DNA of 64,000 nucleotides from assembly GCF_963853765.1 (NCBI RefSeq), contig NC_088854.1:2604001-2668000 (forward strand). Direction: 5' to 3'. The DNA is from Magallana gigas (lineage: Eukaryota). The stretch's first letter is position 1, and every line of letters starts with the position of its first letter. The position numbers were made by a program, and so were the translations under genes. Below the pieces are notes generated by a model. It made no database searches and was not told where the DNA came from. It saw nothing but the letters and a program-made list of their open reading frames with translations. Shown here piece after piece: positions 25,201-61,100 of this stretch.

Positions 25201-28200
25201 CCAGTTGTGACGTCAGATGAACGACTGCTCACCGACAGGAAGTTAGTTGCGGTCCCCCAGCATCCCCGTCAATTAAGGCGTTCACAAAGAGAATAAAACC
25301 GCCGTTTCCAGGGTTTTGGTGAGACTGGTCCTCGCGTCACCAATCGACTCATTGAGGCAATAAGATTTTATTGGTCTTTTGTTACAAATAAAGCCCGTCA
25401 TGGTTAATGAATACAAACCTGAGATCAAGAACCTTTGTTTAACTACTGTATTTAAATTGTATTTATTTAACTGCTACAATGAAAATATTAATCATAACAT
25501 TCACATATGAAAATTCTAATGGTAGAACATATGCTACCCCTACAGTCTCCGTTTGACACATCATTATATTATATACATCGATTAAATTGATTTTTAAAAA
25601 TTCAAGAACAATAAGGTAAACCAGAGTTTCACTATAATAATCTGGTAGAGCATTGAAAACACAATGACATCTTTGGTTCCATTGCGGCAATTTGTAAAAC
25701 ATATTATGAGTAAACGCGGAATTAAATAAGACATTTGCGTGACAGAGACTAACAATTATTTTAACCCCTATTCTTTGTTTCTCGAATAGAGTCATTTTCT
25801 TCACAACATTTGATATTTACATAAAACTGCTCTTTATTTGCAAACTAAAACCACAAAAATATGTTAAGGTCCAAATATGCATTATTTACCAATTCAAGCT
25901 TTGACTCCATAGGTATCATCGAAACGACCACGCGAGGTTCATGTATTTGATGGTGTCTGACACGGTAATTGGTACTAAACAAAACAGTTCACAGTTCATA
26001 CTGGGCTAACACGTGGTCAGGACGAGAGATACAGGGACCAAAGCATAAAGCGGCCCCATAAATCATTAATGAACTCCATATACACGCCAGTAGCACGTCA
26101 GATACATAGGTAAATATTGTGTGGTTAACAGAGCTCAGTTTTGTTTTTTAGAATCAATAAACTACCATCTTCTACCTTATATACATCAACATTTCCGATA
26201 TTTACAACAATTAAAACGTCGACTATTTTGTCAGAAAATACAATTAAAAAAAGTTTGTGTGAGGATAAAGTTATTCGACAAACAGCTTGATCAGCAGTTA
26301 CGGATTTCGTTTGACACTTTTGATCCAATGTTGTCGCATGCTCCTATTTTATATTCTCGCGATTTGATGCCAAACGGTTTAATCGCGAAATTAAGTACTC
26401 AAATAAAATAAGGAATCTACAGTATTCCATCTGCCTGAGACCCACCTTAATCCACTATTTATCCACCTGAGACCCACCTTAATGTCACTCTCATCCACTA
26501 TTTATCCACCCGAGACCTACCTGAGACCCACCTTAATGTCAATCTCATCCACTATTCCATCCACCGGACACTCACCTTAATGACTCTTTCATCCACTATT
26601 CCATCCATCTGAGACCCACCTTAATGACCCTCTCATCCACTATTCCATCCACCTGAGACCCACCTTAATGACTCTTTCATCCACTATTCCATCCACCTGA
26701 GACCCACCTTAATGACCTTCTCATCCACTATTCCATCCACCTGAGACCCACCTTAATGACCCTCTCATCCACTATTCCATCCACCTGAGACCCACCTTAA
26801 TGACCTTCTCATCCACTATTCCATCCACCTGAGACCCACCTTAATGACCCTCTCATCCACTATTCCATCCACCTGAGACCCACCTTAATGACCTTCTCAT
26901 CCACTATTCCATCCACCTGAGACCCACCTTAATGACCCTCTCATCCACTAGTCCATCCACCTGAGACCCACCTTAATGACAATCTCATCCACTATTTATC
27001 CACCTGAGACCCACCTTAATGACACTTTCATCCACTATTCCACCTATAACATAGACTTTGTTTTTGTCTAATTCTTCTAACATATCAGTTGCATCAGGAG
27101 TGAGGTAGATGATGTCATTAGTGTCAAACAGCTCCAAAACTGGAACCTCTGTCATTTCCACCTAAAACAAAGAAAAGTTCAATCCCACCATTTTATCCAT
27201 CTTGTTATCATTTTAATTAAATAAATGATTTAGTTGATGCATATTGCTGCTAAAAAATAAATTGGCTTTTACTTCTTTTATCGTTTTTTCCAAAATTTAT
27301 CTGAGAAATGCTCAGACAAGTTGAAATGTTTAATCAAAACAATATTTGGTTTCACAATATATGAAACAATGGTCCTATTTTGTGTTGACTGCAGTAATTA
27401 AAGAAAAAACAAAAGAATCTTCAAACACAATTTGCAGGAAGGGTCTGTTGCATAGATGTGTGTCATTTCTGAACATTTTGAAGTCATTTAAAACAACCAG
27501 GTTAATAAAACATTAAGAATTTCAGAAAGAGAACACAATGTGTTCCTACTTGAGACACAAGATGTGAGTCACTTGAGGGATTCCTACATACATTCCAGGA
27601 CAGACATAAACACTAGAGAGAACAGGAAGGTTTTTGAGTTCTTAATGCCGAATTGAAGGACAGCAGGTGAATAGGGAACACACAGAGAAAATAAAACAAC
27701 AATTTACTGTAACACACATTTCTACAGATAATTGAAATCCAACCACAAAGCAGAAGCCAAGTTGTTCCTGAGAGGGAGATTTATGTAACCATTACTTGTT
27801 AAGCTCTAATCAACTCTCCATAAATAAATGAAACAATTACATTGCCATGCAAATTAGAAGCAGCCTGTTCTTAGATGTATTTTCATTTGTACAAAATTGA
27901 GCATGTACATTAGGTATCATGGTAGAAATAATTTATTGGCAAGGAATAAGCTACATAAGATTCATTATTTTACTCATTATCTTTTAAATACTGATTTCTG
28001 ACATTATTGCAATAAATATTTGGTGGGAGATCGATACTTTTTTCTTTTCTTTTGACATTGAAAAGACTAATTACTTTGGCATCCTTGCACTAATCATTAT
28101 TCTTTTCAACACAGTTACATATGCATGTGATTAAACCAATTATACAGACCTCCTCCTATAAATCTAAGAATAGAAATGTCATACCTGATACTTCTCAAAA

Positions 28201-30004
28201 CCATCAATCTTCTGAATGCATTCCTGGTATAACTCTCCGTTTTTGTCAAATCCGGCAAAATAAACATGAGCTGGTGTGTCTGCCTTTTTGTTTACCCCGT
28301 ACAATCGGCAAAGCTGCTGGGCCAGTTTATTCTTTTCCTGCCATTTAAATTATAAAGAATTATTTTAAAAAACACACACAAATTGTCAGTTTGTAACAAT
28401 AAACAATCTGTAACTTTCATACAATAAATTTTTAATTATTTCATATTCCAACATATAATAAATAAATATAATGCCTAATACCTGTATAGGACTACCGGTA
28501 TATATGGCTGTGCGGATTTCGTGAATTTCTATCCATAAAAACAAAATATGGAAAATACCGTACATATCACACTTGATCATTACAAAACTAAAGCTTCAAA
28601 GTGTCACCAGAATTCACCTTTGATGTCATAGTGTTTTCCATGCTCAGGTCAATGCAAATTCTTTGACCACAAATCATGGCCGCCTCGAGCTTAGACTTTA
28701 TTTCTTCTCTCAACTCTTTCCTAGTAGGTTGAACCATAGCTTCCTCTGAATTTAAAGACAAACATATTCACTTTGACAGATGTGACAATGCTTGACAAGT
28801 ATTTTAACTGAATTTGAAATTGTTTAAATCATTTTTTATTAAATCATAAATACTGAATACTGATGACAGAGCACAGTTTTCAAGCATATGTTATGATTTT
28901 AAAATATAATCATAATGGATAAATTATGTTATTTACTACTACAGTATAGAAAGTGTCAAAATACAAACTTTTCTCTTTCTTTGCCTTTTCTTTCATTTTC
29001 AGCTTTTGTAACTGTCTTTTTTCTTTCCTCATCTCTTTTTTTCTTTGCATGGCTAATTCTTGTTTTAATCTTTTTTTCTGTGATCTCTAACAGTATAAAA
29101 AAATCACAAGTTCATATTTTTAAATTAAATTGTTTTAATATTTGTTTCATATGAAATTACTGGTACATCAATATATCATGAAAGATCAATTTTTATCATA
29201 CTTTCTGCATATAAACATTCAAAATAGCAGTAAATAAACATATTATTAACGCAACAAGTACTGTAAACCAATTTTTATTCTTTTATTCGACGACTAATGT
29301 TCGCGACCAAGCCTTATCCAGACCTGTATTGTTATAAAAATTACAGACAAAGGATTGGTTCGCGGCAAGAAATATTCGCAATGACAAGGCTCTCGCTAAC
29401 CTCGCGAAAATTTCTCGTACGCAAATAACCTGGTGGTAGGGTCTAGAAATATATGTTCATGAATACATTTCATTTGCCTATATTTACAAACTTACAGTGA
29501 TAAAACAACCACGGATGTATATACTGGTATTAGTACATACTTCCCTGAAACAACTGATCAGTGCTGAATTTCAATTCATGATGAGCTTATTGTAAATAAT
29601 TAAAATTTATATACTATCTGCTTGGTATATTGCATATCTATTTTTGCCCTTGAACATTAAAAGGTATTCTTTATACCATACTAAATACTTTATCTTTAGG
29701 AAATACTTCATAGGCAGACTATATGTGTTAATAAAAAACACATCTATTGTATTTGTATTACATAAAGTTTGATTGAATGATTCTCACATACCGGTAACCG
29801 CTTCAGTTCAGTTGCCACTGTTTTGTCAGGTGCGTCAAACTGGTCCCTCGTGACCCCATTACAATCACTCGAGGACTTCACTTCCAGGATTTCATCCTCA
29901 GATTTCTCTTTGATCATAGTGGCTGGACTTTCATTCTTAGATGTGTCTTTGTTTCGACTAACTGAGTCGTTATTTTGTGTTTCGTTCTCCTCAATATCAC
30001 ACAT
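22208..30004 (-). CDS. TRMT10B: tRNA (guanine-N1)-methyltransferase TRM10 family, TRMT10B-like, about 324 aa, 7 exons
   Basis: complement join(30004-29792,29086-28969,28745-28618,28337-28185,27161-27015,23772-23655,22305-22208), 975 nt in phase. Motifs RICIDLSME, LAQQLCRLYGVNKKA, IIYLTPDA, VYVIGGIVDES, RLPIDRYM, QILAINQVFEIL, PERKGYVL. Confidence 0.9.
23010..23329. mobile_element. Degenerate MITE related to the 13442-13844 element
   Basis: GTAGCATCGT / ACGATGCTAC inverted ends, G/C runs and a shared internal GATTAGGATTT..A.GATTTT motif. No clear TSD. Confidence 0.5.
24316..25017. mobile_element. Non-autonomous mariner-like element in TRMT10B intron 5
   Basis: TA|CGAGGGTTGTCCCAAAATA ... TATTTTGGGACAACCCTCG|TA: perfect TIR, TA TSD and a mariner-type CGAGGG terminus. 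Confidence 0.85.
26423..27045 (-). repeat. 44-bp minisatellite made of the TRMT10B exon-5 end plus splice donor (14 donor copies including the real one)
   Basis: Minus-strand unit GTGGATGGAATAGTGGATGAGAGGGTCATTAAG|GTGGGTCTCAG versus exon end GGTGGAATAGTGGATGAAAGTGTCATTAAG|GTGGGTCTCAG. Confidence 0.95.
29259..29430. mobile_element. Truncated TACTGTAAAC-type MITE
   Basis: Starts TACTGTAAACC with internal TTCGCG repeats. The right terminus was not found. Confidence 0.35.
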
Positions 30005-30335
30005 TGCACTAACTTTCCATCAGCGTTTTACAATCAAATTTCATATTTTCCTAAATTTGGTGTGTTTCTCTATTTGTTTACATGTCATCCATGCGACTTT
30101 CATTTTAAATAATATTATATCCGGTCTTCAAATTTTAGATAACCTGAACATGTGTTGCTTTCTATTTTTGTTCAAAAAATAACATTTCATGAACATTTTT
30201 GCTAAAATTCAACAACTTTTGCAAGATATAGAAATCTTGTTTAACTACGTTTGTATTATATTTAAATATATAGAATGAATTTTGTGAGAGATGAATTCGA
30301 ATAAACTAGGAACAATCTATCTTGTTGAACAGAAA

Positions 30336-33300
30336 ATGAAAGTCAGGAAAACGTTTCTGAATTTTGGCGAGAGGATATTTTCTGATGCATACAAACTTGT
30401 AAGTTGTAGTGTGTAAAATTGTAGACACTCTTAGAATAAATGGATTTTTCTTTTACAGAACATTTCATAATTTTCTATTCATCGCAACGATCATCGCAAT
30501 CGTTGCAACAAAATAAATCTTTAAAAGCGACAGTAAACATCATTTCAGAGTTTCCCGAGATATGTTAGCGGACAGCAACAACAACATATGGCGAGAGGGT
30601 TGCCGAAAAAACTACCAATTGCAGGAGTTGAGAAAGTCATTGTTGTTGCATCAGGCAAAGGTGGGGTAGGGAAGTCCACAACAGCAGGTACTCACACTTT
30701 AGTCAGTTGTTTTCAAAAGCTCCGTTCAGTGATATGTATATGTAAAATACATACGATCATACTTAAACATGCATGCTGAGAAATCTAGACGCCTGCTGTT
30801 AACCTAATATACTCCCTGATGTCCATGTGTTGTACTTGCTGGTGTCCATGTGTGTATTCCTTGGTGTCCACATGTTGTACGTACTCAGTGTACATGTGTT
30901 GTACTCCCTGGTGTCCATGTGTTGTAATCCCTGATGTTGATGTTTTGTACTCCCTGATGTCCATGTGTTGTACTCCCTGGTGTCCATGTGTTGTACTCCC
31001 TGATGTCCATGTGTTGTACTCCCTGATGTCCATGTGTTGTACTCCCTGATGTCCATGTGTTGTACTCCCTGGTGACCATGTGTTGTACTCCCTGATATCT
31101 ATGTGTTGTACTCCCTGATGTCCATGTGTTGTACTCCCTGATGTCCACGTGTTGTACTCCCTGGTGTCCATGTGTTGTACTCCCTGATGTTCATGTGTTG
31201 TACTCCCTGATGTCTATGTGTTGTACTCCCTGATGTCCCTGTGTTGTACTCCCTGATGTTCATGTGTTGTACTCCCTGATGTCCATGTGTTGTACTCCCA
31301 GGTGACCATGTGTTGTACTCCCAGGTGACCATGTGTAGTAATCCCTGGTGTCCATGTGTTGTACTCCCTGATGTCCATGTGTTGTACTCCCTGGTGACCA
31401 TGTGTTGTACTCCCTGATATCTATGTGTTGTACTCCCTGATGTCCATGTGTTGTACTCCCTGATGTCCACGTGTTGTACTCCCTGGTGTCCATGTGTTGT
31501 ACTCCCTGATGTCCATGTGTTGTACTCCCTGATATCTATGTGTTGTAATCCCTGGTGTCCATGTGTTGTACTCCCTGATGTCCATGTGTTGTACTCCCTG
31601 ATGTTCATGTGTTGTACTCCCTGATGTCCATGTGTTGTACTCCCAGGTGATCATGTGTTGTACTCCCTGGTGTCCATGTGTTGTACTCCCTGATGTCTAT
31701 GTGTAGTAATCCCTGGTGTCCTTGTGTTGTACTCCCTGATGTCCATGTGTTGTACTCCCTGGTGACCATGTGTTGTACTCCATGATGTCCATGTGTTGTA
31801 CTCCCTGGTGACCATGTGTTGTACTCCCTGATGTCCATGTGTTGTACTCCCTGATATCTATTTGTTGTACTCCCTGGTGACCATGTGTTGTACTCTCTGG
31901 TGTCCATGTTTTATACTCCCTGGTGTCTAAGAAATTCCTGCAAGGTTTGTTAGAGCCTTGTTGTTGCGATTGCAGGGAATATTTCTCACCGCAAATCTTA
32001 TCGTATGATTGTTATTACAACACCAGTCTGAATAAGGCTTGCTCATAGAAATAAGTTGTTGCAAACCATGCAGTTTATCATATTAAGTAGATAATGAAAT
32101 AATGTTGTTGCTAATAAAAGTTGATTTACAGATATGTATTTTTCAGTGAATCTTGCCCTGGGATTAGCTGCAAATGATGAGGTACTTGTGTTCTTTAAGT
32201 GAGATCTGTGCCTCTATATTGTCAAACTTATAATCTGTTTCTTTAGCATTATAGCATGTGACATATATATATGTTTTCAGTCAAAGAGAGTAGGTTTACT
32301 AGATGCTGATGTATATGGTCCCTCGCTTCCAACCATGATGAACGTCAATGAAGAACCGGAGTTAAACAAGCGTAGGTGTACTATGTACATACTGAGGGTG
32401 TTCACTGGTTTTGTTAGTTCACTACTAGTGTGCATGTACGTCTTTCAATCTTACTACCCGATAATGTTAAATTGAAAATTCAGTTAACTTATTATATTTA
32501 GCGTGTCTAAATTTTTATTTAATTTTTTCAACAAGATAGCATAGGTTTGATTTTGTGCAATTCAGAATGTACCTATTCACACACACGCACGCACAGGCGT
32601 GCATGTGCGTGCGTGTGAAAATTTAGGGGAACCTGCTTACAGTTACTATTGTATAAAGGATCATTATGAAATATTTTAAAGTGCATGCAGAAGTATCTTA
32701 GAAACAAACTTTATTTTCTGCTATCTCTACTTTGCAGAAAATCTAATGATACCACTACAAAATTATGGACTGAAATGGTAGGTATCTCTTAATACATCAT
32801 TAGACTTTTAGCTCAATCATTCATATCTATGTGATTTTCTGCTAGACATTTCTCTGAGTATAATACCGTAATACAATTTTCCAATGAATAGCATGTCTAT
32901 GGGGTTCCTTGTGGAGGAGAATGCCCCGATTGTCTGGCGGGGAATGATGGTCATGTCTGCCATACAAAAGTTACTAAGACAAGTAAGTACCATGTACTAC
33001 CAAGAAGCAGAAAAATACAGCTATACTGAAACATTCTTGTACATGTACAATACATTATGTTCCAGGTGGTGAAAATTCAGTTTCTTGTACATGGCAAAAA
33101 AATACTAATAGCCATACCTTTAACCAGAAAATCTATATATTTCTTGATATCTATCTTGTATAAGTACATTCCATTTACCATAAAGGTGGCTTGGGGTCCG
33201 TTGGATTACCTGGTGGTGGACATGCCCCCAGGGACGGGAGACACCCAGCTCTCCATCTCACAGAACATCCCCGTAAATGGTAAGACGACTATCAACAGCT

Positions 33301-35092: not shown

Positions 35093-35158
35093 ATGATGGC
35101 ATGTGATACGAATGTGTGGACAAGATTACATAAATGATGGCATGTGATACGAATGTGT
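35077..35158 (+). repeat. 41-bp tandem duplication spanning the NUBPL stop codon
   Basis: GGACAAGATTACATAAATGATGGCATGTGATACGAATGTGT x2. Confidence 0.9.
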
Positions 35159-36912: not shown

Positions 36913-39900
36913 TCATGATTTTCTTTTCTGTTTTCTCTGTGATGCTGTTGCCATTTTCTTCTGATTTTCTGCTTTGTTTGCACCAGCCTCCGACTCTGCT
37001 GCCATTTTTCTCTTCTTTGCTGGGCTCTTTGAGCCACCACTAGATTTATCTGTTTTGCTCTGAATATAATGAATAACCTACTATTTATAAATGTAGATTT
37101 CTGCTTATTTGTCAAATTTGTTTCAACATCAATCATTCATCAACAGCACTGTAGAGTTATATCTGTTCTGTATTTACAACAAATTACAGAACACCAGTAA
37201 AATTTTAAATAGCTTGCAGGATTGCTGAGAAGGGTATACAATTTGGTCTGCCAGGTGTCGCATCAGAGGCGAGTTCAACAGAGCGAGTGCTTGCGATCGC
37301 TCGCCAAAATTTGTGTTGCGGGTATAGGGAATTTTGGCGAGCGCTCACGAGCGCTCGCTCTGTTGAACAGGCCTTAGGTCTTAATCTAGGTCATGTGATT
37401 ACTCGAGTATGACTTCAAGAAAGTGAGATATATCTAGTAAATATTTGCAATTTTTGGAGATTTTTTGTAGGTAAGATATTTTCTATATATTTTTTCCAAC
37501 AGTATTTCTTTCGTTTGAACTTATTACGCTGCCATAGTGCGGTATGTTGTAACAGGAATAGAGAAACCAAAATGTACAGCAAAAAAAAATACTTCTTTTT
37601 AAGGTGGCTCTATACACCACTTTTTGATGATGCAGTATGCAAAAAAGTAAATCTGGAAGTATGCAATTCCGGTACTGGCTGATTTAAAATGGAAAATTCA
37701 TTACTTAAAGTAATGTGGTATATGACACCTTCACGTTGTGTTGTATGGGTTCTTTCAAAAGATAATGAATAGAGTAACTAACTATAGGAGAGAGTGTTCT
37801 AGAGGCTTTCTTTGTGCAATATGAATGGGTAATAAATGAAAAATAACAATCTACACTTGAGTTATCACAAGACCTAGATTCAGATCTGGGGTCCATTCAA
37901 GATTGTAGCTGCTACAGATGGCTATGTAGCAGTTACACTGTTGAACGACAAGCTAGCCTAGACAATAGATATACATAACCTTTATTTTTCAGGCTAAGCA
38001 TTAAATTCAAGATGGCTACTTTAGTTACCACTTTGTAACAAACATGAAATTCATTTTATTTAGTGATATTTTATTAATCCTATTTACATTTTTAACTTGT
38101 ACTAGTATATTTCTGCTTGAAATTAACAAATTGTGTTGATGTAATTAGTCTTTACTTGAATATTTCCAACTTCAAATCAGAGACCCAGTGGCTAACCAAG
38201 CGGTCTGTTCAATAGACCTAGATATCTACGACCTAGCGGCTAGACTAGCTGCTACAATTTTGAACGCAGCCCTGATGTGATACCTGACTGACCAAACTTG
38301 ACACCCTTTTATGATGTATCATTATGAATCACCATACTTTAGATGATGGAATTTTGTCCTTTTCTTTAAATTGCCTCAAATCTGCTGTAAAAAGCACCTG
38401 TAAACATAAAAACAGGCATCCTGAAACATTTTTACTATTTCTTTTAGTTCATGAAACTTGATTTTAAAATTTGGACTGCTTTGAGGTTTACATACGGCCT
38501 GGGCCCAGCCTGCATAAGGTCCCCACAGAGTTCTAAAATGGTCACCTACAATATAAACACACTATACTTAATTCTTTTTTTTGTTCAACATCTGTTTCAT
38601 TATATGAACAGTCATTACTCTTCCTAAGAACAGAATCAATCAATCCTTGCATGATTTATTCAGATGTTAGCTAATGCAGTAACTAGTCTATGCTACCTAT
38701 TTCATTTTACAGTTTGTCAGTCAGAGAGAATTATTCCACATTACCTATTTCATTATACAGTTTATCAGTCAGAGATTTGCATTTGGACAGACTTGGCATG
38801 TATCCACGTGCAGCAATCTGCCAGACATGGGTGTCTACTGGGAGAGCATCTGTCTTGTCTAGAGACATCAGACAGACACAGTCAGCAACCTACAAAATCA
38901 CAGCATGCATAACATCATACTAAATTTTCAAAAGCTTCTGGCACAATTACTATCTATAAAGCTTTAGAAAAGTTCATTCCTTGCCTCTTCACAGACTCTA
39001 CAGTATATAAATAGTGCATTTGCGTTGGTTGACAATGGTTTTCTCAGGGTGTCAATTTCAACGGTTACCCTCCCAAACAGGCACTATTTATTTTATTATA
39101 CTGAATGTCTTAATTTTAGAGACAATTTTACTGCTTTTATATAGAAATGACGTGAATTCTACTGTGAAACATATGCACATAATTTACGCACATGTATCAA
39201 TTCAATGATTCATTGTGTTAATCATTGCCAAGTGTGTTTCTAATGCTGAGGGTAACAGAACGGATTAACAACTGTGTCTAAACCAATCAGATTTCATTAT
39301 TTAACATGAAAGTATAACAATGTTTGTAGGTGAAGTACCTTTGCTCCCACTCCATTCAGGGCCAGTAACTCTTTCTTTGCCTCTGCATATGGAATTTCTC
39401 TTAAAGCTCTTAACCAAGTTTCCCCTCCTTTTTCCAAAATTTGCTGTGCACTCTTGTTAATGTATTTGGCTCTGTAAAAAGTTGAAGACATTATGAATGT
39501 ATAGTTACACACTCTTACTGTATGACTAAATCACAAGTGTAATAGGACTCATGCAATTCTATACATGATAAACAGACATCTATCTCTACCTGTATCCAAA
39601 TCCTAGGTTCCGTAACTCACTCTCTACTCCATCCTCCGACAATTCAAAGATGGTGGGAAAACTAAAGTAAGTCTTTCCATTGAACTTGCCCACTTCTCTG
39701 CCATAGTTCTCGCAGAGCTTTTCTACCATAGAGGAGATTCTGGAGATGTGGTTATTGGACGAACAGATGAACGAGAATAAATTCTCCACAGGATCCTGGC
39801 GTAGAATGCGTATTCCTCCAAACTTTGAAGATATACTCTGAAAGTTTGAATCCACATCGGACCACTTTTGATAAAGATTCCCTACCTTTATGTTCAGCTG

Positions 39901-41395: not shown

Positions 41396-41397
<2 letters not shown>

Positions 41398-41448
<51 letters not shown>
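41398..41448. repeat. (TC)n microsatellite
   Basis: Direct observation. Confidence 0.95.
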
Positions 41449-41452
<4 letters not shown>

Positions 41453-46980: not shown

Positions 46981-49900
46981 CTAGTGTTGTAAGTTGTCTA
47001 TGACAGCGTGTGTGAAGTCTGAGGTGTAAGCATAGCCTCCCATGTCCCTGGTCTTCACCTGAAACACAAAAACAATCATGGATTATTCTTTTACAAGACT
47101 GTTTTCAATTTCAGTAAAAGTGTTAAATTCATCAGAACTTATTTAACCCCATTTCTTGCTATGACTATGGAAACACCATCAGATACTAGACAGGTTTTAC
47201 TGTGTTTACTGTGTAGACCAACCTTCTGGGTCTTTATGACCCTGTGTACAGAGTCCTCGATCAGCTTGGCGTGGTAATCCAGGTGGATGTGCTTCAACAT
47301 GTTGCAGGCCGACAGTAAAGTCGCTGTGGGGTTAGCTATGTTCTTTCCTATGGCTTCAGCAAAGGCATGTCTTGCACCCTAACAGAAATACACAAAAAAA
47401 AGATTACAAAATTGTATGCACAGTAGAAAATCTAGGCAAGACTTAGCTGAACTGAATCTCACCTAAATTAGAACAACAGAAATCCATTTAACTAAGCGCT
47501 CTCTCCTCTTTCTGACTGAGAACATACTGTACCTGTTCAAACACTGCTACATCTGAGCTGTAGCTCTCCCCTGGGACTACCCCTGCCCCACCCACTAAAC
47601 CGGCTGCAAGGTTGTCAACAATGTTTCCATAGAGATTTGGCATCACCATGACATCAAACTGATGGGGATTAGAAACAAGCTACAAAGACAATGAGTAAAA
47701 AGTGTAAAAAAAAAATGTACCTGGAGACATTGTATTAGTCTTTGATTCAGAATGATTTAAAACACATCATTTATTCCTTTTTTCCTTCTTTAGTACAGTA
47801 TCTCCTTTACTGTTAAAAATTTGGTCATTGTAAACAAAATGTACAGATACAATTAGGCATACATGTATGCTGTACACGATTATATGGTACCTGCATACAA
47901 CAGTTGTCAATAATCATTGTGTCAAACTTGATCTTGGGATAAAACTGTGCCACTTCCTCACAGCATTTGATGAACAAGCCATCTCCCAACTTCCTGTGTA
48001 CAAAAGCAGTAAATGAATAAATATGCTACAGTGAACACACAAATATATATTTTTACACACACATTACTTGGAATCTGTCAACTGAATTAAAAATATTAAT
48101 ATAATATTGCAGTATTATCACTCCATCTAACACTAAATACATGTATACCAGTATTCTATAATAAACATGTATACCAGTATTCTATAATATTAAACTTTAA
48201 TCATGTTATTATTCATAGGACAAATGATAGAAAACAATATGTTCATATTCTAAGAACAAATGAATTTTAAAATAAAGCTACGACAAAAAAATGATCGATA
48301 TGACATCATTCTGTTAGTATATTAGACATGAACTTGCGAAGTTTGACTTACATGATGTTGGCTTACTTACATGGTGTTGGCTTACTTAATGATGTTGGCT
48401 TACTTAATGATGATGTTGGCTTACTTAATGATGTTGGCTTACTTACATGGTGTTGGCTTACTTAATGATGTTGGCTTACTTAATGATGTTGGCTTACTTA
48501 CATGATGTTGGCTTACTTAATGGTGTTGGCTTACTTACATGATGTTGGCTTACTTAATGATGTTGGCTTACTTAATAATGTTGGCTTACTTACATGATGT
48601 TGGCTTACTTAATGATGTTGGCTTACTTAATGATGTTGGCTTACTTACATGATGTTGGCTTACTTAATGATGTTGGCATACTTAATGATGTTGGCTTACT
48701 TACCTGATGTTGGCTTACTTACATGATGTTGGCTTACTTACATGATGTTGGCTTACTTACATGATGTTGGCTTACTTAATGATGTTGGCTTACTTAATGA
48801 TGTTGGCTTACTTAATGATGTTGGCTTACTTACATAATGTTGGCTTACTTACCTGATGTTGGCTTACTTACATGATGTTGGCTTACTTACATAATGTTGG
48901 CTTACTTACCTGATGTTGGCTTACTTACATGATGTTGGCTTACTTACATGATGTTGGCTTACTTAATGATGTTGGCTTACTTACATGATGTTGGCTTACT
49001 TAATGATGTTGGCTTACTTAATGATGTTGGCTTACTTACATGATGTTGGCTTACTTAATGATGTTGGCTTACTTAATGATGTTGGCTTACTTAATGATGT
49101 TGGCTTACTTACATGATGTTGGCTTACTTAATGATGTTGGCTTACTTAATGATGTTGGCTTACTTACATAATGTTGGCTTACTTACATGATGTTGGCTTA
49201 CTTACATGATGTTGGCTTACTTACATGATGTTGGCTTACTTACATGATGTTGACTTACTTACATGATGTTGGCTTACTTAATGATGTTGGCTTACTTACA
49301 TGATGTTGGCTTACTTAATGATGTTGGCTTACTTACATGATGTTGGCTTACTTACATGATGTTGGCTTACTTAATGATGTTGGCTTACTTAATGATGTTG
49401 GCTTACTTACATGATGTTGGCTTACTTAATGATGTTGGCTTACTTACATGATGTTGGCTTACTTACATGATGTTGGCTTACTTAATGATGTTGGCTTACT
49501 TAATGATGTTGGCTTACTTAGTGATGTTGGATTACTTACATGATGTTGGCTTACTTACATGATGTTGGCTTTGTGAACTGCTGTCACTTTACTTCTGTTG
49601 TGCTTCATGGCATAGTCAAAAGCAAACTTGGCGATTCTCTTTGAGTTTTTCCTAGTGATGATTTTCAAACTCTCAACAACTCCAGGTACTGTCTGTCAAT
49701 ATGTATGAAGTTAATCCATTATTAAGCATTATAGAAAAGTTAAAAATATTTCAAAAGATTTGTAGAAATGATCCACATTTTCCCACTTCAGTTATACCAT
49801 ATACCAAAGGCTGACTTCAAAACTTAAAGCATTGTACAAATACACTCTTGTAGTTTTGAGTATTAAAGATGTTGGCTGATAAGAGCCCAACATCATGTCT

Positions 49901-51888: not shown

Positions 51889-52173
51889 GTCTGCTGTTAC
51901 TTATAAATCATTTTTTTCAAATTTTATTGATTTTTTAACAGAAATTTCTTCTACTGATGAATTATACTCAATCTTAAATGAACCCTCCAAACAATAAACA
52001 AAGTCACAACCGTTTTGTGCTTTAAATAATTGTAAATACCTTGATTTGACAAAGTCGTCTGAAGACAGTCCTTGAAACGAAAGAGGACATGTTGCCTGAA
52101 TAAACAGATTACGGAATGTCGAACCCGAACTAAATTCGTCACTAATGCATTGCTAAGCATAGGGTTTTGACAC

Positions 52174-53314
52174 TTTTTATACCCTCGCTCCGAAGGAGAG
52201 GGGGTATTCTGTTTTACCCTTGTGTGTCTGTCTGTCTGTCTGTCCGCCCGTCCGTCCGTCTGTCCGTCCGTAACAAAAATTTCTGTCGCATTTATCTCAG
52301 CAACTTTTTATCGCAGATGCTTGAAATTTTTACACAGTGTTGGTTAAGGCATGCCATATCGTGGGATATATTTTTGTACCAATCGGACGTCAACTTCCTG
52401 TTAAATGACGACTTTGCTTATTTTTTAACTAAAATTTTCAAACAAATTTTCGTCAAAGATTTCTCAGCAACTATTTATCGCAGATACTTGAAATTTTTAC
52501 ACAATATTTGTATAGGTATGCCATATCGTGGGATATATTTTTGTACCAATTGGACATCAACTTCCTGTTAAATGACGACTTTGTTTATTTTTAGCAAAAA
52601 TTTTCAAACAAATTTTTGTCAAAGAATTCTCAGCAACTGTTAATCGCAGATGCATGAAAATTTTACACAGTATTTGTATAGGCATGCCATATTGTGGGAT
52701 ATATTTTTGTACCAATCAGACGTCAACTTCCTGTAAATGACGACTTTGTTTATTTTTAGCAAAAATTTTCAAACAAATTTTTGTCAAAGAATTCTCAGCA
52801 ACTGTTTATCGCAGATGCTTGAAATTTTTACACAGTATTTGTATAGGCATGCTATATCGTGGGATGTATTTTTGTACTAATCGGACGTCAACTTCCTGTT
52901 TAATGAGTACTTTGTTTATTTTTAGCCAAAATTTTCAAACAAATTTCCGTCAATGATTTCTCAGCAACCATTTATCGCAGATGCTTGAAATTTTAATACA
53001 GTATTTGTATAGGCATGCCATATTGTGGGATAAATTTTTGTATCAATCGGACGTCAACTTCCTGTGAAATAACGACTTTGTTTATATTTAGCCAAAATTT
53101 TCAAACCAATTTTTGTTAAAGATTTCTCAGCAGCTATTTATCGCAGATGCTTGAAATTTTAACACACTATTTGTTTAGGCATACCATATTGTGAGATATA
53201 TTTCTGTACCAATTGGATGCCAGCTTTCTGTTAAATGTCGACTTTGCTTATTTTGCATATTCACATCAGAGCGGAGGTATCACTAGTGAGCATTGAGTCA
53301 CAGATATCTTGTTT
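52174..53314 (+). mobile_element. Helentron-associated interspersed element (HINE-type) carrying about 6 copies of a 166-bp satellite (Cg170/HindIII-like)
   Basis: 5' TTTTTATACCCTCGCTC box, then a (GTCY)n microsatellite, then monomers at a 165-167 bp period (ATCGCAGAT at 52310, 52477, 52643, 52808, 52974, 53140). The 3' box GAGCGGAGGTAT is inverted to the 5' box and is followed by a short stem-loop. Confidence 0.85.
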
Positions 53315-55142
53315 GCTGTTGCTTAGATTCTGTCAAACCCATGTGTTGCTAGATTATGAATTCTTGTTCTGAAAAATTTATTAATTACTTCTTTAATCCC
53401 TGATACTGGGTGAAACATTCTACCTATATTTCCACGCAGTACACATTTATATAATTATGTAAATGTAAAAAAATTTGCCCTATTCGTTGTGATCCTATTA
53501 ATAAAAGGTTACATGTATGTAAATAATGATATTCATCAATAATTTTTTTATTTAAATCAAAGTCATATGATTACATGTCAAACTAAATTTTTCTGACCCC
53601 AGATTTTGACACTAATAATTTATAATTGCATCTCTTAAAAGCAGACCCTGCACACTTTTGTTCTTAAATATGAAGTGAGCCTAGCAGAACCAGAAATCTC
53701 AAACACAACTTCAAATGATTATTTGATAATTTAATCAAAATGCATATAAATGTAGTTGTACACAGAGATCTAACAGCACGGTCAGGTTTTTATGATTTGA
53801 AAAAAAAACCCATTAACTACAGTTATATACATGTAATTTAATATTGATCTTGGATATTCAAAGAAACATTGTAAATGTACCTACAATCTTCAGAGAAGAC
53901 AAAAATTTTTATAAATGTAAAGTACTATTTTCTCAACAATTTAAAATATCCCAGAGCATACATAGTACAATGTCCTTTGAAATTTCTAAAAATAAAATTT
54001 ACTGGAATTAGTAAATTTTTAGTGGCATTTTTAAGACTGTAAAGACACAGACAGTAAATTACAAATCACTTAAAATGCTTATAGACTTGTTCCGGGAAAT
54101 CTCTACAGTAGGTATAAACATGTATACCTTGTTGTTTCAAATTTTCTACTGTAATTAATGTTGAACTTCAGAGATCAAAATAGAAAATGTAAAAACCAAA
54201 AAACAAAGGTCACATATTGCACGCATCAAAAACACACACTCTACATATAGAACTACACATAATACTATATATGCACATGATATAATAAATAACTGTTCAT
54301 ACAATTTCCAAACACTGAGTGGTAATTTTCTAGTCATATCATGGTGAATATAAAGAATACAAAAATGACTGTGTATAATGGAATGCATCTATTGTCCTAC
54401 ACAACAGCTATGCTGTAACCACTGGGGCTCGTCACAATCTTTTTTGTTTTCTATTTTGTGGTCAAAAAGTTAAAAGACAAACAAATCAGGATGAGTCCAT
54501 GCTGTGGCATTCCGAAATCATCAGACTTTGAATCTGGTGCAGTACCAGTATAGTCTCCCTTTTGCAAGTGGCTGTACAATTATAACAAATACACATAAAA
54601 CCTTCCAGAACATCAAACACAACAGTCCAAATTTTAGACTAAATCGAAATCAGTAACTGTTATGCAAATTATACATGCAGAATTCTAAATGTATCACAAA
54701 CACGTTAAAATATATTTTACCTGAACAAAATTGCACGCCACAAAAATGATTCCTTGTAAAAAATGATTGGATAAACAAATTTTATCATAGAACAAAATGT
54801 CAATGAAACACATGCAGTCAGTGAATTAATCTACATTTCAATGTCAATACAAACATGTATGTTTTGATTCTTTCTTTGGAAAATAAATACATGTAAAACA
54901 AGTCTCAACTATTTACATAGCTAAAACTTTTCTAATAGAAACAATCTTTTCCTATTGTAATGATGTGAAAAATCACTGTTTTACTTCTTTCCAATGTGGC
55001 CTTAGTACAAAACAGTGAAATCCTTTAACTTGTACATTCATAGTTCCAAATCCTGAGGGACACACTTGCATTGGTTGGTAGTTTTGTTTTATCAGAACAT
55101 ATGGATTAAGAACTTTCCATTGGCTACAATCTTTTCTCCTGG

Positions 55143-58100
55143 TCACACTGGCATGGGAAACTGTTGTGCGTAGTTCAGAGGTTTGTCACTTTTAACATAT
55201 GATGAATCTTCACTGGTAACAAAGCATCAGATAAGATAAGCAGTAGGAACACAATGCACATCAATACATTAGGTGATAAAATCAACAGAGGCATTTTATT
55301 TTCAATTAAAAGTGATTGTTGATAATTTCACTTATCTTTATTATAACTCTAAATGTCTCCAATTCACAATAAATGCAAATTCAGAGGCAATATTTTCATA
55401 TGTAGAGGTATAATGGTGTTACCGGTAATATTTACATGTTGTTTTGTCAAACTGAAAATTATCCCACAAGGAGCTTTCTACGTTTACAGGAACAATCAAA
55501 CTATCTATCTCTATAAAAAAGAACTTGATAATTGAATCTGTCTGGGGTGATGACACCAATGAGACATTACCAATGAGACATTACCTGTGTGTATGGGTGA
55601 TGACACCAATGAGACATTACCTGTGTGTATGGGTGATGACACCAATGAGACATTACCTGTGTGTATGGGTGATGACACCAATGAGACATTACCTGTGTGT
55701 ATGGGTGATGACATCAATGAGACATTACCTGTGTGTATGGGTGATGACACCAATGAGACATTACCTGTGTGTATGGGTGATGACATCAATGAGACATTAC
55801 CTGTGTGTATGGGTGATGACACCAATGAGACATTACCTGTGTGTATGGGTGATGACACCAATGAGACATTACCTGTGTGTATGGAGAGTCGCATTCTGAA
55901 GATGAATGGAGTCTGGGAGGAGTTCTACGTTCCTCACGCTGCCAAAGAAGTCCGTCAGTAGCACTTTGTTCACATCTCTCCTAAACAGGTCCGTACGTTT
56001 AGCCACTGTCGATATGCACTGGTATTTGGGACAAACCTCAAGCTACAAATACCACAAAAGATTCATCTCTGTGAGATCTTTGTTACAGAGAGATGTATAA
56101 ATGTCTACCCACATTGACAGACTAGAGAACAGCTGCAGTGATTGACTTACAAACTGTCCCATGGTTTTCTTACTGCCAGGAGTGACCGTCTCCAAAAATT
56201 CTAGTGCATAATATGTATATCTATCAATGACATACACACCAATGCTTGGGTCCACGTGATGCTGAAACATACAAACAGCAACATGTCACTTCATTTTTTG
56301 AAGAACTAACAATTGTAATTACATGCACAAGAAAAATGTGGTTCGTATACTACTGTGTATGAATTTTATAGCATTAAATACATAATTATAATCATTATCT
56401 ACACAACAAATTCACTGAATTCTTTTTCCAAATTTTTTTTTATCGCCACCAACATTGTGCTCTGCTCGCATCCCATAAGGAAATTACTGAGCACGTATAA
56501 ACTACAAGCCATGTTACTAACATTATTTTGCTTTGGATTGTGCATTATTATCTCCCTTTAGAGTGTGCATCATCATCTCCCTTTAGAGTGTGCATTATTA
56601 TCTCCCTTTAGAGTGTTCGTTCTTCTCTCCCTTGAGAGTGTAGTCTGGCTTACTCGTGCGAGGCAAGTCTCGAGAGCGAGAGTCTGGGGTAAGCGAGACT
56701 ATTGAGAGTGTGCATTATTACTTCCCTTGAGAGTGTGCATTATTATCTTCCTTGATGAGAGTGTGGATTTTTACCTCCCTTGAGAGTGTGCATTATTATC
56801 TCCCTTGAGAGTGTGGATCTTAACTTCCTTTGAGAGTGTGCATTATTATCTCCCTTGAGAGTGTGGATTTTTACCTCCCTTGAGAGTGTGCATTATTATC
56901 TCCCTTGAGAGTGTGGTTTTTACCTCCCTTGAGAGTGTGCATTATTACCTCCCTTGAGAGTGTGCATTATTATCTCCCTTTAAAGATTATGATAACTCAC
57001 AGGGGCATCGTATCCGCTCTACACTCTATGACATTATATAAATAATACACAAGGGAAGAATCGAAAGTAGGACACGATTTGTAAACAACGTCAAAAAACA
57101 ACTTACTTGACAAAAGTTACGCAAATCCTCCCACACAATGTTGCAAATGTTGTCAAAAAACATGTTCACACTCAAATATTCCTAATAAACTCGGTAAAAA
57201 GCGTTTTTATCACATTAAAATCGCTGTCTGCTGCAGAAACCTAATCTCTTCGCCCAAGAAAAGATAACTCTGTGCTTTCTCTCTCTATATATATATGTTC
57301 AGTTATGATAGAAATTTCCGCGGTAAACTGTAAAATGTCTAGGGAAATTTTTGTCTTAATAAAATATGTAACTACCGTAAGCATAATAACATTCGTTCCG
57401 ATATATTTGGCATGTACTTTAATTAGCGTAATTTGATATGCAATTGTTTAAAAACAAATATATTTCCTATCATTTAATGTAGAAATGTAAATACACTAGT
57501 AATTTGATATTGACAATAAAACAATGCTGAAATTCTAGGCAACGACAATTAATTTTGAAGGAATGGGTTGCAAAGACAATAAATGAATTATGAGTATTTT
57601 AATTGTTGAATAAAAAAATTATTAAAAAAAATTATATGTCAACACCAACGTAGTTTTTCATTAACATTTTAGAGAAGAAAAAAAATATCTAAAATTAAAT
57701 ACTTTTTCATCATCATTAATTTTCATTCTAAAATTACAAAATAAATTCCTTAATTAAATTTAAACTTTACGAGTCTTTTTCTTCTAAATCAAATGGTCTT
57801 TCTCTAGTGGTCAGTATAAAGTAATTGCAGTAGCAGGTCGAACAATATTCATTGTTTTCTAATTTCCTATCATTACATGTATCTTTAAGACAACAAATAT
57901 ATACACCATAAATATAAATTGTGACAGCAGATATGCATTATTTTAAAAAAATATACATATATTTTGACATTTTAAACTGAATTCTACTTATTTATTTAAA
58001 ATTAGATTGTCCATCATTCAAAATTCACCCTACCCGTGCTGCAAGTTTAGATCTGCAGATGTATGAAATTTATTTCTTTGTTTTGTTATTGATGTTTCGC

Positions 58101-61100
58101 GGAATTTTACTATGTATCGTTACTGAACATATAGAGAGTCCTGAGAGTTTTCGGATGGCGAAAGTACAGAGTTATCTTTTCTTGGGCGAAGAGATTAGGT
58201 TTCTGCAGCAGACAGCGGTTTTAATGGGATAAAAACGCTTTTTACCGAGTTTATTAGGAATATTTGAGTGTGAACGTGTTTTTTGACAACATTTGCAACA
58301 TTGTGTGGGAGGATTTGCATAACTTTTGTCAAGTAAGTTGTTTTTTGACATTGTTTACAAATCGTGTCCTACTTTCGATTCTTCCCTTGTGTATTATTTA
58401 TATATATGTCATAGAGTGTAGAGCGGATACGATGCCCCTGTGGATAACTGTAAGGGAATACATACTGAGAGTGAGTCCTCTCCCACTTTACTGCTGGCCA
58501 CGGCTAGAATGTTGGGGGAGTAGAACTTCTGGAACATGGACTCCGCCTGGCATGTATCAATCATGAAAAACACCTCATGGTATCTGGAAAATAAATTTTG
58601 ATTAAATTAAATGAGAATTTCCACTTTAAAGGGGCATAATCATGATTTCAGCTGAACATTTTTAACTATTTGCTTTTCAATTCTTTTTGACTTTGACATT
58701 TTAAAGTATTTTTATTGGGTACGCAAAATTTGAACGTAGTTGCTGTTTAATGAGTAAGACACAGACCTCATAATTCTTTTGCAAAATTACAAGTTTGGCC
58801 AACTAATGGACATTCTCTATGAAAACATGCGTATATGGTGATAATAAGCCCACAATACATGTACTCCTACCTTCTCTTCTGCCACATTTGTTCAAAAGCA
58901 TCTGCCAGTTCAACATTGGAAATTTCCTCTGCATCTTGGAATTTTAGAAATCCATCCCCTCCGTGACCTGCATTAACACAAAATTTGTAAACATTTCTAT
59001 AAATCTTACTGTTTATCAGCTCATTCGATACATCCATCAACTATTTTCAGGCAAAATTCATCCATCAAAAGTCTACCTGTCATATACACCAAAACATTGG
59101 AGTGTTCATCAGACAGCAGACGTTTACTTCTTGGGGTGCTAGGGGGCAATCGGCCAGTCAGAACTCGAATGAAGTTTTCCACTGTTACCTGAAATAAATA
59201 CCACAATACACCGGGCTCAAATCCACAATAGTCCACCTTTACCAAACACGTACTGGTACACTTCGTATCTAGGATAAACCATCGCCTCTAGAGGCACTCA
59301 CCTTGTATCCATGATAGTCCACCTCTACTAGAGGCCCTTGCCTCATATCCACAAAAGTCATTCTCTACTAGAGATACTCATCTTGAAGGCTCAAAAATCC
59401 ACTTTCTACTAGAGGCACCTTGTACCCACATTTAGCCACATCTACTAGGGGCACTCACCTCCTTTCTATCATAGCCACCTATAAAAGAGGCACTTACCTT
59501 GTATCCATGATAGTCCACCTCTACTAAAGACACCTGCCTTGTATCCATGATAGTCCAACTCTACTTGAGTCATTCACATCCACAATAGTCTACCTCCACT
59601 TGAGTAACTTACCTCGTATCCACGATAGTCCACTTCTACGTCGTCTCCATACACATTAATCTGGTTGTTGGCATTGTTGAAAACAGTAGCTGCAAAATAT
59701 CAAATGAACCAAATTCTAAGTTCTCAAGATACAAAACAGCAGAATTACATGTAAGTATTATCTTGTAAAATATGGAATCTACATTTTATGAGCTTAAATC
59801 TTAAAAAATGTATTTGAAATTTAAGTGGCCAAGCTAAAATAGGAATTTCTCTTTACAATAAAACTCAGTTGTATTTGCAAAGTCATAAAGACCACAAGAT
59901 TTACCTCACTATATCCATTATTTGATACATCCATAAAACGAATTTATAATAGATAAAGATAATTTAAAAAAAAAACAAGTTTTAATAAAGAAAATAACAT
60001 CTTGAAGCTTTTTAGAAACTCATGATTTTCTGATTGAATTATTTCTGTGGAAATAAATTCCTTCAAACAATAATGTAAATTACTATTGTTAATTTCTAAA
60101 ACTTTTAAACTTCATTATTTTCACATAATTATACAGAAGCTGAACTCAAAATCAATTGGCTGTATTATTCAATTCATTTTACCAGTGTTTTTTACAGCTA
60201 ATTTGCTAGAGATTCCAGAAGACTATGCTATGATAGTAATTTTCTGTATCTGCACTAATACAGAATGAGTTTAACTGTAATTTCTTCTATTTTCAGCCTT
60301 GATCAAATGCCTCAGCCATCATTCCAAAATTACAAAAGTACAAAGGTTGGCTGTAAAATTGGTTATCAATTTTATGAAAAAAGCAAAGATTTCATGCAAT
60401 ATGTTAATGACAGGCTATTTAAATGAATAATGTCTCTTCTTACCAGGCCTTGGATTTCTGGGATTGCATGCCATGTCATCTGCCACCATCAAAATAATGC
60501 GACTGAAATCAGAATATTGTGTCTTAATTAAATCAGAATAAGGATTCATTATCATTAGCTCTCTTTAATAGCAATTTACGTAATGATTCTACTTTGATAT
60601 TAATTTCATTCCTGTTATTTTTTTTCCATGTCCGTTTGACAAACATATCCTTGTGAATAAAAAAAAAATCTGAATTGAACAAGTACTTATTCAACAATTT
60701 GATTTAAAATCCAAGTAATGGCGCATGTGGCAGAAATGACAAAAATGATAAAAATATTACACAATTAGTTAATCCTTCATAAAGACCTAATTTACACAAA
60801 TCAATTCAAAACTGTCAATTTTTGATAACAAGTAGTCACTTTGGAAAAATATTTTTGAGCAAAACTAGTGGAGAAATTCTTTATTTTTTAATCTACAACA
60901 AAATCATTCATTTCTTAAAATACACAAATTAACCAAAGTACAATTATTATTTGGGCGTTGATGTATTGAAATACACCAAACCTGTCAGGAATTCCAAGTC
61001 TTTTACAGCTTCTATAGATAGAGAGAACATTGGCAACATGTCGGTAATTAAACCAAAATCTAGAGGTGTCCACAAGCACTGCCCAGTTATTTGTATGTCC

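What the first reader, a model, noticed from the sequence alone, without database searches (positions are those of the whole stretch)
26423..59640. Recurrent splice-donor-seeded tandem arrays in five introns of four unrelated genes
Seen: in TRMT10B intron 5 (44 bp x14), OGG1 intron 4 (48 bp x2), IDH3B (18/19 bp x about 65), PIGK intron 9 (36 bp x9) and PIGK intron 4 (about 40 bp x about 11, decayed), the repeat unit is the last 12-33 nt of an exon plus the GT donor plus a few intron bases. The authentic exon end is always the first copy in transcript order and the array runs into the intron. All five are in minus-strand genes, and I saw no equivalent at acceptors. The set resembles an age series (2 copies, homogeneous arrays, decayed array). 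In every case reading past the true donor meets an in-frame stop before the next intact donor. Four of the five units have AG|GT at the junction. Established: tandem duplication of AG|GT segments is a proposed route to intron gain, AG|GT sites underlie recursive splicing, and premature stops trigger NMD. Inference: this may reflect a mutational process targeted to 5' splice sites (for example transcription/spliceosome-coupled pausing, R-loops or slippage), or tolerated/selected decoy-donor arrays whose copy number tunes productive splicing through NMD. The stops alone are weak evidence of selection because GTAA and AT-rich introns are stop-rich.
Basis: partly seen in the sequence, partly recalled or inferred. 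Interest (0 to 1): 0.85.

Follow-up and report, generated by a model that had tools for sequence, protein, structure and literature searches.

The report
Splice-donor minisatellites in oyster genes
In four neighbouring Pacific-oyster genes the end of an exon plus its splice signal has been copied in tandem 2 to 66 times into the intron; this repeat type is already known (amphioxus "mirages", human F7). It also turns up at the same exon ends in other oysters, which points to a duplication process prone to exon boundaries rather than a new regulatory device.

Summary
All five arrays are real. Each starts with the authentic exon end, and an in-frame stop precedes the next intact donor.

**Evidence for the authentic donor**
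- RNA contigs place both PIGK junctions at the first copy.
- A transcript-derived OGG1 protein does the same.
- Homology fixes the IDH3B and TRM10A exon ends.

**What they are.** They are exon-boundary minisatellites, a known kind: amphioxus "mirages" and human F7, IFI6 and CBS. This scan has already logged about 30 donor and 10 acceptor arrays elsewhere in this genome.

**New here**
- Three tandem copies of AGGTAAGT occur 8 to 17 times more often per occurrence than the reversed word. An acceptor word shows no excess.
- In Crassostrea virginica the same TRM10A and OGG1 donors carry arrays with different units. The same IDH3B intron there holds an acceptor-derived array.
- Other oyster-like contigs show repeats at the PIGK exon-9 donor.
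- 34 of 46 donor-word arrays lie within 8 Mb of a chromosome end.

**Not supported.** I found no use of decoy donors and no constraint on them. The process is not exclusive to donors.

**Verdict.** Most likely these are neutral, boundary-prone tandem duplications tolerated by first-donor splicing. They are new members of a known kind with an interesting evolutionary pattern.

The parts
26423..27047 (-). TRM10A-like intron array. The 44-bp unit is about 33 nt of exon end plus gtgggtctcag. There are 15 junction copies and all keep GT. The authentic exon ends at 27015.
   Evidence: Exon end, and from the cross-species exon ends.
27015..27161 (-). TRM10A-like exon ending ...GGIVDESVIK, phase 0. 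It supplies the first copy of the array.
   Evidence: Pfam tRNA_m1G_MT profile 70-120. PDB 4fmw alignment.
38680..38775 (-). OGG1 48-bp duplication, 2 copies of about 31 nt exon end plus about 17 nt intron. The authentic exon ends at 38745 and the second junction lies at 38697|38696.
   Evidence: z=14.6. P0002 reads NEIG|DHF.
48346..49571 (-). IDH3B array of 66 units of 19 nt (gccaacatcat|gtaagtaa) or 18 nt (first G lost). The authentic exon ends at 49559 and the stop TAA overlaps the donor.
   Evidence: Gene identity. Junction.
55555..55885 (-). PIGK intron-9 array of 36 bp x9 (about 12 nt exon end plus 24 nt intron), with a 14-bp sub-repeat at the far end. The authentic exon ends at 55873.
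   Evidence: RNA joint 55212/55873 in X16 and X15. DNA word depth is about 7-fold in X3.
55213..55872 (-). PIGK intron 9 (660 nt), about half of it array.
   Evidence: joints table.
59216..59634 (-). PIGK intron-4 decayed array, about 40 bp x about 9 (about 21 nt exon end plus about 19 nt intron). Of the 7 junction-like copies, 5 have GT and 2 have GC. The authentic exon ends at 59613.
   Evidence: z=15.5.
59189..59612 (-). PIGK intron 4 (424 nt), almost wholly made of array units.
   Evidence: joint 59184/59609 with the cut moved by 4.

Best explanation
These are exon-boundary minisatellites of the kind called 'mirages' in amphioxus and exemplified by human F7 intron 7.

1. A short segment straddling an exon end and its 5' splice site was duplicated in tandem.
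2. It then expanded by slippage or unequal exchange.
3. The gene tolerates this because the spliceosome uses the exon-proximal donor. The array therefore stays intronic, and any read-through would meet a stop.
4. The arrays carry no detectable function of their own.

Their excess at exon ends, their presence at orthologous exon ends in other oysters and their clustering near chromosome ends are best read in one of two ways. Either a duplication process, probably tied to recombination, favours exon boundaries. Or the array is repeatedly re-seeded from the one copy that selection keeps intact. A tolerance filter would then make donor arrays commoner than acceptor arrays.

Shown: the anatomy, first-donor use for PIGK and OGG1, the genome-wide excess and the cross-species occurrence. 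Inferred: the duplication mechanism, neutrality and the filter.
For: - Anatomy and first-copy position.
- Only first-donor junctions in RNA contigs of two studies, and no reads inside the arrays. The OGG1 transcript-derived protein agrees.
- An independent 2012 DNA run supports the 36-bp array at about 7-fold word depth, and its contigs match the decayed array exactly.
- Known kind: PMC1557585 (F7, IFI6, CBS, LMNB2, PDGFA) and PMC3087553, PMC3902484 (mirages).
- Genome-wide donor-word excess, and none for an acceptor word.
- Six of 11 evaluable AGGTGAGT arrays start at a clear coding exon end: helicase, P-loop, RNR large subunit, LamG and two others.
- C. virginica has 32 bp x >=36 at the same TRM10A donor and 44-47 bp x4.4 at the same OGG1 donor, with different unit boundaries. 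Saccostrea has none at TRM10A.
- The PIGK exon-9 donor is repeated in other oyster-like contigs (z 8.1).
- Decoy donors vary as much as the rest of the unit.
- 34 of 46 donor-word arrays lie within 8 Mb of chromosome ends (p 1e-11), against 5 of 15 for control and acceptor arrays.
Against: - The genome-wide test rests on exact 8-mers and counts matches. At the level of loci the excess is smaller: about 25 loci among the first 100 donor-word matches (C1-C6), against 11 loci genome-wide for the control.
- AGGTGAGT gave only 63 against 41.
- The 6-mer version is swamped by minisatellites carried on transposable elements.
- In a random 200 kb, only one of about 14 tandem repeats lay next to a donor, and its unit shows no similarity to the exon.
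- Neutrality is inferred from weak tests. Raw RNA depth was 121 reads, so rare decoy use and NMD targets would be missed.
- The species of several comparison contigs are unknown.
- An ancestral array that was later remodelled cannot be told apart from independent origins.
Confidence: 0.6

Rival explanations
1. A mutational process is aimed at 5' splice sites as such. Polymerase or spliceosome pausing, R-loops or transcription-replication conflict at the donor would cause local re-replication or slippage, so donors are intrinsically hot.
For: There is a donor-word excess of 8 to 17-fold per occurrence and no excess for an acceptor word. The same donors are hit in two Crassostrea species with different units. 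Earlier notes log about 30 donor against about 10 acceptor arrays.
Against: Acceptor-spanning arrays occur in the same IDH3B intron of C. virginica. They also occur in the IDH3B and PIGK genes of other bivalves and elsewhere in this genome. A tolerance filter can produce the donor bias without targeting. The clustering at chromosome ends fits a regional process, such as recombination, better than a splicing-coupled one.
Confidence: 0.2
2. The arrays are selected. Extra U1-binding sites behind weak donors would help exon definition, or decoy donors would tune output through NMD, so the array state is conserved while its sequence turns over.
For: Arrays sit at orthologous TRM10A and OGG1 donors in two species although the introns cannot be aligned. 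Most authentic donors here are non-consensus: GTGGGT, GTAATG, and an exon end of ..CAT. From memory, not checked here, F7 repeat number has been linked to mRNA level.
Against: - No inner-donor junctions were seen.
- Donor positions in the decoys are no more conserved than the rest of the unit.
- Half of the IDH3B units have lost the first G of the donor.
- Saccostrea TRM10A and three IDH3B relatives lack the arrays.
- Arrays with perfect consensus donors are common.
- Stops are expected in AT-rich GTAA introns.
Confidence: 0.12
3. The repeated AG|GT units are recursive splice sites that remove the intron stepwise.
For: Four of five units regenerate AG|GT.
Against: The introns are short (196 nt to about 3.2 kb). 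No joint ends at an inner AG. The IDH3B unit has no AG|GT. Recursive splicing is a feature of very long introns (established knowledge).
Confidence: 0.03
4. The arrays are assembly artefacts, or they mark newly gained introns made by AGGT duplication.
For: Short-read contigs break at the 36-bp array, so the copy number is not independently fixed.
Against: Word depth is about 7-fold in an independent DNA run, and contigs match exactly across the decayed array. Comparable arrays stand in a separate C. virginica chromosome assembly. The intron positions are old: the ANIM intron is shared by many taxa and the TRM10A intron by three oysters.
Confidence: 0.02

Closest known systems
Human minisatellites whose first monomer spans an exon/intron boundary: F7 IVS7 37-bp VNTR, IFI6 (6-16) intron 2, CBS IVS13 31-bp VNTR, LMNB2, PDGFA intron 4 (PMC1557585)
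   Same: The unit is exon end plus 5' splice site plus intron start. The authentic site comes first and identical pseudo-donors follow. Normally only the most upstream site is used. Unit sizes are similar, and the arrays are variable in length.
   Different: The human cases are isolated. Here there are five in 33 kb, dozens logged across the genome, up to 66 copies, and arrays at the same exon ends in a related species. Use of the second and third sites, as seen in IFI6 and CBS, was not seen here, though depth was low.
Amphioxus 'mirages': Adh3, globins BflGb6 and BflGb9, TnC, PGBD5 (PMC3087553, PMC3902484, citing Canestro et al. 2002)
   Same: These are tandem duplications of exon/intron boundaries at either the 5' or the 3' side. 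They do not disturb splicing, they vary in length, and they are suspected to be general in the genome. From my own knowledge, both amphioxus and oysters are highly polymorphic.
   Different: This is a mollusc rather than a cephalochordate. In this window all arrays are on the donor side and the units are shorter (19-48 bp, against up to about 160 bp). The cross-species occurrence and chromosome-end clustering shown here were not reported for mirages in the papers I read.
Intron gain by tandem duplication of an AGGT-containing segment (Rogers model, as cited in PMC3087553)
   Same: Tandem duplication of a segment carrying AG|GT creates extra splice signals.
   Different: No new intron is created here. 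The introns are old and the duplicates lie inside them.
Recursive splice sites
   Same: An AG|GT junction lies inside an intron.
   Different: There are no long introns and no junction evidence, and the units derive from the exon end rather than from a 3' splice site fused to a 5' splice site.

Membership tests
Exon-boundary minisatellite (mirage / F7 IVS7 type) | Head-to-tail array of a 10-200 bp unit | tested here: met
   TRF periods of 44, 19, 36 and 40. The OGG1 48-bp x2 was found by eye and by z=14.6.
Exon-boundary minisatellite (mirage / F7 IVS7 type) | One end monomer spans the real exon/intron boundary, so the splice site is reiterated | tested here: met
   PIGK x2 by RNA joints. OGG1 by P0002. 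IDH3B by profile continuity and the conserved ORF end. TRM10A by exon ends in three oysters.
Exon-boundary minisatellite (mirage / F7 IVS7 type) | Mature mRNA uses the authentic (exon-proximal) site | tested here: met
   Met for PIGK introns 4 and 9 (contigs X15 and X16) and for OGG1. Not directly tested for IDH3B and TRM10A. Raw-read depth was too low to exclude rare use.
Exon-boundary minisatellite (mirage / F7 IVS7 type) | Copy number varies between individuals (VNTR) | tested here: inconclusive
   One RNA-library contig 'goes back 196' within the intron-4 array. Short-read contigs break at the 36-bp array. No long reads were available.
Recursive splice site | Junction reads from the upstream exon to an inner AG|GT, in a long intron | tested here: not met
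   No such joint. The introns measure 196 nt to about 3.2 kb.
Intron gained by AGGT tandem duplication | Intron absent from relatives and flanked by the two duplicate copies | tested here: not met
   The ANIM intron position is shared by many taxa. The TRM10A and OGG1 introns are present in C. virginica, and the TRM10A intron also in Saccostrea.

The most novel reading that the evidence does not exclude
Oysters, and perhaps hyper-polymorphic marine invertebrates in general (amphioxus included), may have a tandem-duplication process that strikes at exon/intron boundaries. One example would be recombination or repair tracts that start in conserved exons and misalign where allelic homology collapses. 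Such a process would seed minisatellites again and again at the same exon ends in lineages whose introns no longer align. It would be most active in the terminal megabases of chromosomes.
Probability: 0.3. Interest if true: 0.8.

Novelty: new member of a known kind. Interest (0 to 1): 0.5.

Why it matters
Each array on its own is an ordinary example of a known oddity. Together they matter for three reasons.

- **Splice-site choice.** They give a large natural set of genes in which one authentic 5' splice site competes with up to 65 near-identical copies. That is the situation used in F7 to study how the first donor is chosen.
- **Origin of minisatellites.** The excess at exon ends, the presence of arrays at orthologous exon ends in a second oyster, and the clustering near chromosome ends suggest that minisatellite birth is not uniform along genes. 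This bears on how introns grow: PIGK intron 4 is almost all array, and about 1.2 kb of the 1.56-kb IDH3B intron is array.
- **Practical use.** Gene prediction, primer design and short-read assembly in oysters will fail at these exon ends.

Tried and rejected
- **Random genome sample.** I planned 2 Mb. An unbiased share of boundary arrays therefore could not be measured.
- **Content of the 200 kb.** Only L002 (50 bp x30) sits next to a donor. It starts 25 nt after the donor, and its unit is not similar to the exon end.
- **Six-mer test.** GTAAGT x3 gave 4368 against 1494, but both lists are dominated by dispersed minisatellites carried on transposable elements. I do not rely on it.
- **Next TRM10A exon.** I sought it with Pfam and PDB and could not confirm it. 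The candidate lies at about 23.6-23.8 kb.
- **Raw RNA reads (X22).** Only 121 reads were laid, too few to test rare decoy use.
- **Literature.** Canestro et al. 2002 is not held. No paper on this in oysters was found.
- **Stops and strand.** I considered the stop-codon pattern as evidence of selection and rejected it. Five of five is expected about one time in ten for AT-rich GTAA introns. 'All minus strand' is trivial, because the four genes simply share a strand.
- **Other arrays in the window.** The 23-bp x49 array (30810-31927) is intergenic and the 25/50-bp array (56531-56982) is deep in an intron. Neither is derived from a boundary.
Full report
**Observation**

TRF finds minisatellites at 26519-27042 (44 bp), 48346-49571 (19 bp x66), 55569-55884 (36 bp x8.8) and 59288-59639 (40 bp x9, 66% matches). 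Reading the minus strand shows that each begins inside a coding exon and runs across a GT into the intron. A 48-bp two-copy duplication at the OGG1 exon end was missed by TRF. It is plain in the sequence and in a local-alignment test (z 14.6).

Counting junction-like copies gives:
- 15 for the TRM10A-like gene, all with GT;
- 66 for IDH3B, with 19-nt units and 18-nt units that lost the first G;
- 10 for PIGK intron 9;
- 7 recognisable for PIGK intron 4 (5 GT, 2 GC);
- 2 for OGG1.

Units hold 11-33 nt of exon and 8-24 nt of intron.

**Gene identity and exon ends**

PDB and Pfam matches name the genes: IDH3 beta, GPI transamidase PIGK, OGG1 and a TRM10 methyltransferase closest to TRMT10A.

- **PIGK.** RNA contigs of two studies laid on 54400-60300 give six introns. 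Two of them are 55213-55872 and 59189-59612, so the exon ends at 55873 and 59613 are the first copies of the two arrays.
- **OGG1.** P0002, a 411-aa protein predicted from assembled contigs and 99% identical to the window's exon, reads ...KLYNEIG|DHFRTLWG.
- **IDH3B.** The exon ends at Iso_dh profile position 191 and the next exon resumes at about 192-196. ORFs from many taxa stop right after ...HKANIM, so this intron position is old.
- **TRM10A.** Similarity among three oysters ends at ...IIK|GT.

With the frames fixed this way, an in-frame stop lies at +27, +11, +1, +1 and +36 nt. In every case that is before the next intact donor (with frames corrected from the ORF coordinates).

**Reality of the arrays**

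An independent 2012 DNA run has contigs that break at the 36-bp array, with word depth of about 171 against about 25 nearby. Its contigs match the decayed array without a difference. Assembly artefact is therefore unlikely.

**Use of decoys**

No joint from an inner donor appears in the contigs, and the polyA raw reads leave the arrays uncovered. Only 121 raw reads were laid, so rare use cannot be excluded. I examined ten arrays: three of the five here, two in C. virginica, and five from elsewhere in the genome. The nine donor positions of the non-authentic copies vary as much as the rest of the unit (0.082 against 0.078, Wilcoxon p 0.43). The decoy donors are neither preserved nor purged.

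**What is known**

Minisatellites whose first monomer spans an exon/intron boundary are described for human F7 (37 bp, only the most upstream site used), IFI6, CBS, LMNB2 and PDGFA (PMC1557585). In amphioxus they are called 'mirages', occur at either boundary, and are suspected to be general (PMC3087553, PMC3902484). I found no paper describing them in oysters.

This scan has met them before in this same genome. About 30 notes concern donor minisatellites and about 10 concern acceptor minisatellites. Several were followed up with the same verdict.

**Is the recurrence more than chance?**

- Within PIGK, two of six RNA-verified introns carry donor arrays and none carries an acceptor array.
- Genome-wide, three AGGTAAGT words spaced 8-38 apart occur 200 times against 35 for the reversed word. 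At spacings of 39-69 the counts are 220 against 19. The single word is the rarer of the two, at 16,687 against 24,509. That is 8 to 17-fold per occurrence.
- By loci the excess is smaller: about 25 among the first 100 donor-word matches (C1-C6), against 11 genome-wide for the control.
- The acceptor word TTTTCAGG shows no excess: 5 against 32, and 19 against 21.
- AGGTGAGT is only mildly enriched, at 63 against 41. Of its 11 evaluable loci, six start at an obvious coding exon end: an SKI2/MTR4-like helicase, a P-loop exon, the ribonucleotide reductase large subunit, a LamG exon and two others.
- A six-mer version of the test is dominated by minisatellites carried on transposable elements, so I set it aside.
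- The random sample I could fetch was only 200 kb and holds one donor-adjacent array, whose unit is not exon-derived.

I conclude that the excess is real. Its size is only roughly known.

**Other species**

The OGG1 exon led to the C. virginica locus L051. There the gene order IDH3B, LRR gene, OGG1, NUBP-like gene, TRM10A is conserved. Exons are 69-93% identical and introns do not align.

- **TRM10A donor.** C. virginica carries 32 bp x >=36 copies, with 14 nt of exon plus 18 nt of intron. C. gigas has 33 plus 11.
- **OGG1 donor.** C. virginica carries 44-47 bp x4.4 copies, with 22 nt of exon. C. gigas has about 31.
- **IDH3B intron.** In C. virginica the same intron holds >=15 copies of an 88-bp unit made of the acceptor and the start of the next exon. 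The authentic copy is the last.
- **Saccostrea.** It has no array at the TRM10A donor.
- **PIGK exon-9 donor.** One oyster-like contig ends 11 nt into what looks like a second copy. Another lineage shows three decayed copies of about 78 nt (z 8.1). A distant bivalve has none there, but it has a 106-bp duplication spanning the acceptor of exon 7.
- **IDH3B donor.** The array is absent from three relatives. One of them has a 98-bp x2.6 duplication across the acceptor of the same exon.

Boundary-spanning repeats thus recur at the same exon ends with different units, and they occur at acceptors too.

**Position on chromosomes**

Of 46 donor-word array loci on the six chromosomes of known length, 34 lie within 8 Mb of an end. 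The expected share is 26% (p 1e-11). After merging neighbouring loci the count is 24 of 36. Control and acceptor arrays give 5 of 15 (Fisher p 0.011).

The density of the single donor word near the start of C1 is close to the genome mean. The window lies 2.6 Mb from the end of its 61.5-Mb chromosome. The C. virginica ortholog lies 2.4 Mb from the end of its chromosome.

**Explanation**

The best reading is neutral minisatellites of the known boundary type. They arise by tandem duplication and expansion and are tolerated by first-donor splicing. Their genesis or persistence favours exon boundaries and chromosome ends. A tolerance filter makes donor arrays commoner than acceptor arrays.

A strictly donor-targeted process is weakened by the acceptor cases. 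A selected decoy or U1-recruiting role has no support but is not excluded. Recursive splicing, intron gain and artefact are rejected.

I offer two hypotheses only as inference. One is that recombination tracts misalign where allelic homology drops at exon edges. The other is that the conserved exon copy keeps re-seeding the array.

Noticed in passing
L051:1-1335 (C. virginica IDH3B intron): An 88-bp x >=15 array made of the acceptor plus the start of the next exon. The authentic copy is the last (exon from about 1339). It lies in the same intron that carries the donor array in C. gigas.
   Followed up: partly
L057:2098-2295 and L060:2823-3077: Two other bivalve contigs carry 106-bp x1.9 and 98-bp x2.6 duplications. 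They span the acceptors of PIGK exon 7 and of the IDH3B ANIM exon. In each locus this is the highest-scoring tandem repeat.
   Followed up: partly
G000 chromosomes C1-C6: Donor-word minisatellite loci are concentrated in the terminal 8 Mb of chromosomes (34 of 46). The window and its C. virginica ortholog both lie about 2.5 Mb from a chromosome end.
   Followed up: partly
window 30810-31927: A 23-bp x49 minisatellite with no splice signal. It lies in the gap between the divergently oriented TRM10A-like gene and the NUBP/ParA-like gene (plus strand, exons about 32.2-34.3 kb).
   Followed up: partly
window 52295-53254; also L013:4758-6215, L015:1566-2017, L017:775-1630, L018:4-581: Arrays with periods of about 161-171 bp turn up in the window and in four of twenty random 10-kb pieces. 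They may be a dispersed satellite or a repeat family carried on a transposable element. In the window the array is flanked by a (GTCC)n run at 52221-52271. I did not test whether these arrays are related in sequence.
   Followed up: no
window 9973-10184 and 12398-12653: Decayed arrays built on the palindromic word AACATATGTT (periods 11, 22 and 25).
   Followed up: no
window 56961-57157 and 58143-58536 (PIGK intron 7): DNA word depth is in the thousands in an independent run, so high-copy dispersed repeats sit in this 2.2-kb intron beside the 25/50-bp array at 56531-56982. In one other oyster-like contig (L053) the same intron is only about 310 nt.
   Followed up: no
G000:C1, many loci between 0.8 and 2.8 Mb: Dispersed copies of minisatellites with units such as a 20-bp GTAAGTCATGCTGGATTATT and a 41-bp GTAAGTCAAATAG... 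unit. These look like internal repeats of mobile elements that happen to carry a donor-like hexamer.
   Followed up: no
window 55514-55924 (minus): A second reading frame stays open for 137 codons through the whole PIGK intron-9 array. It is not the PIGK frame and probably means nothing.
   Followed up: no
window 36916-37077 (minus): The transcript-derived protein P0002 places the last, lysine-rich OGG1 exon here. The OGG1 gene therefore runs from about 41.1 kb to 36.9 kb, ending about 2.6 kb beyond the last coding exon of the NUBP-like gene.
   Followed up: partly
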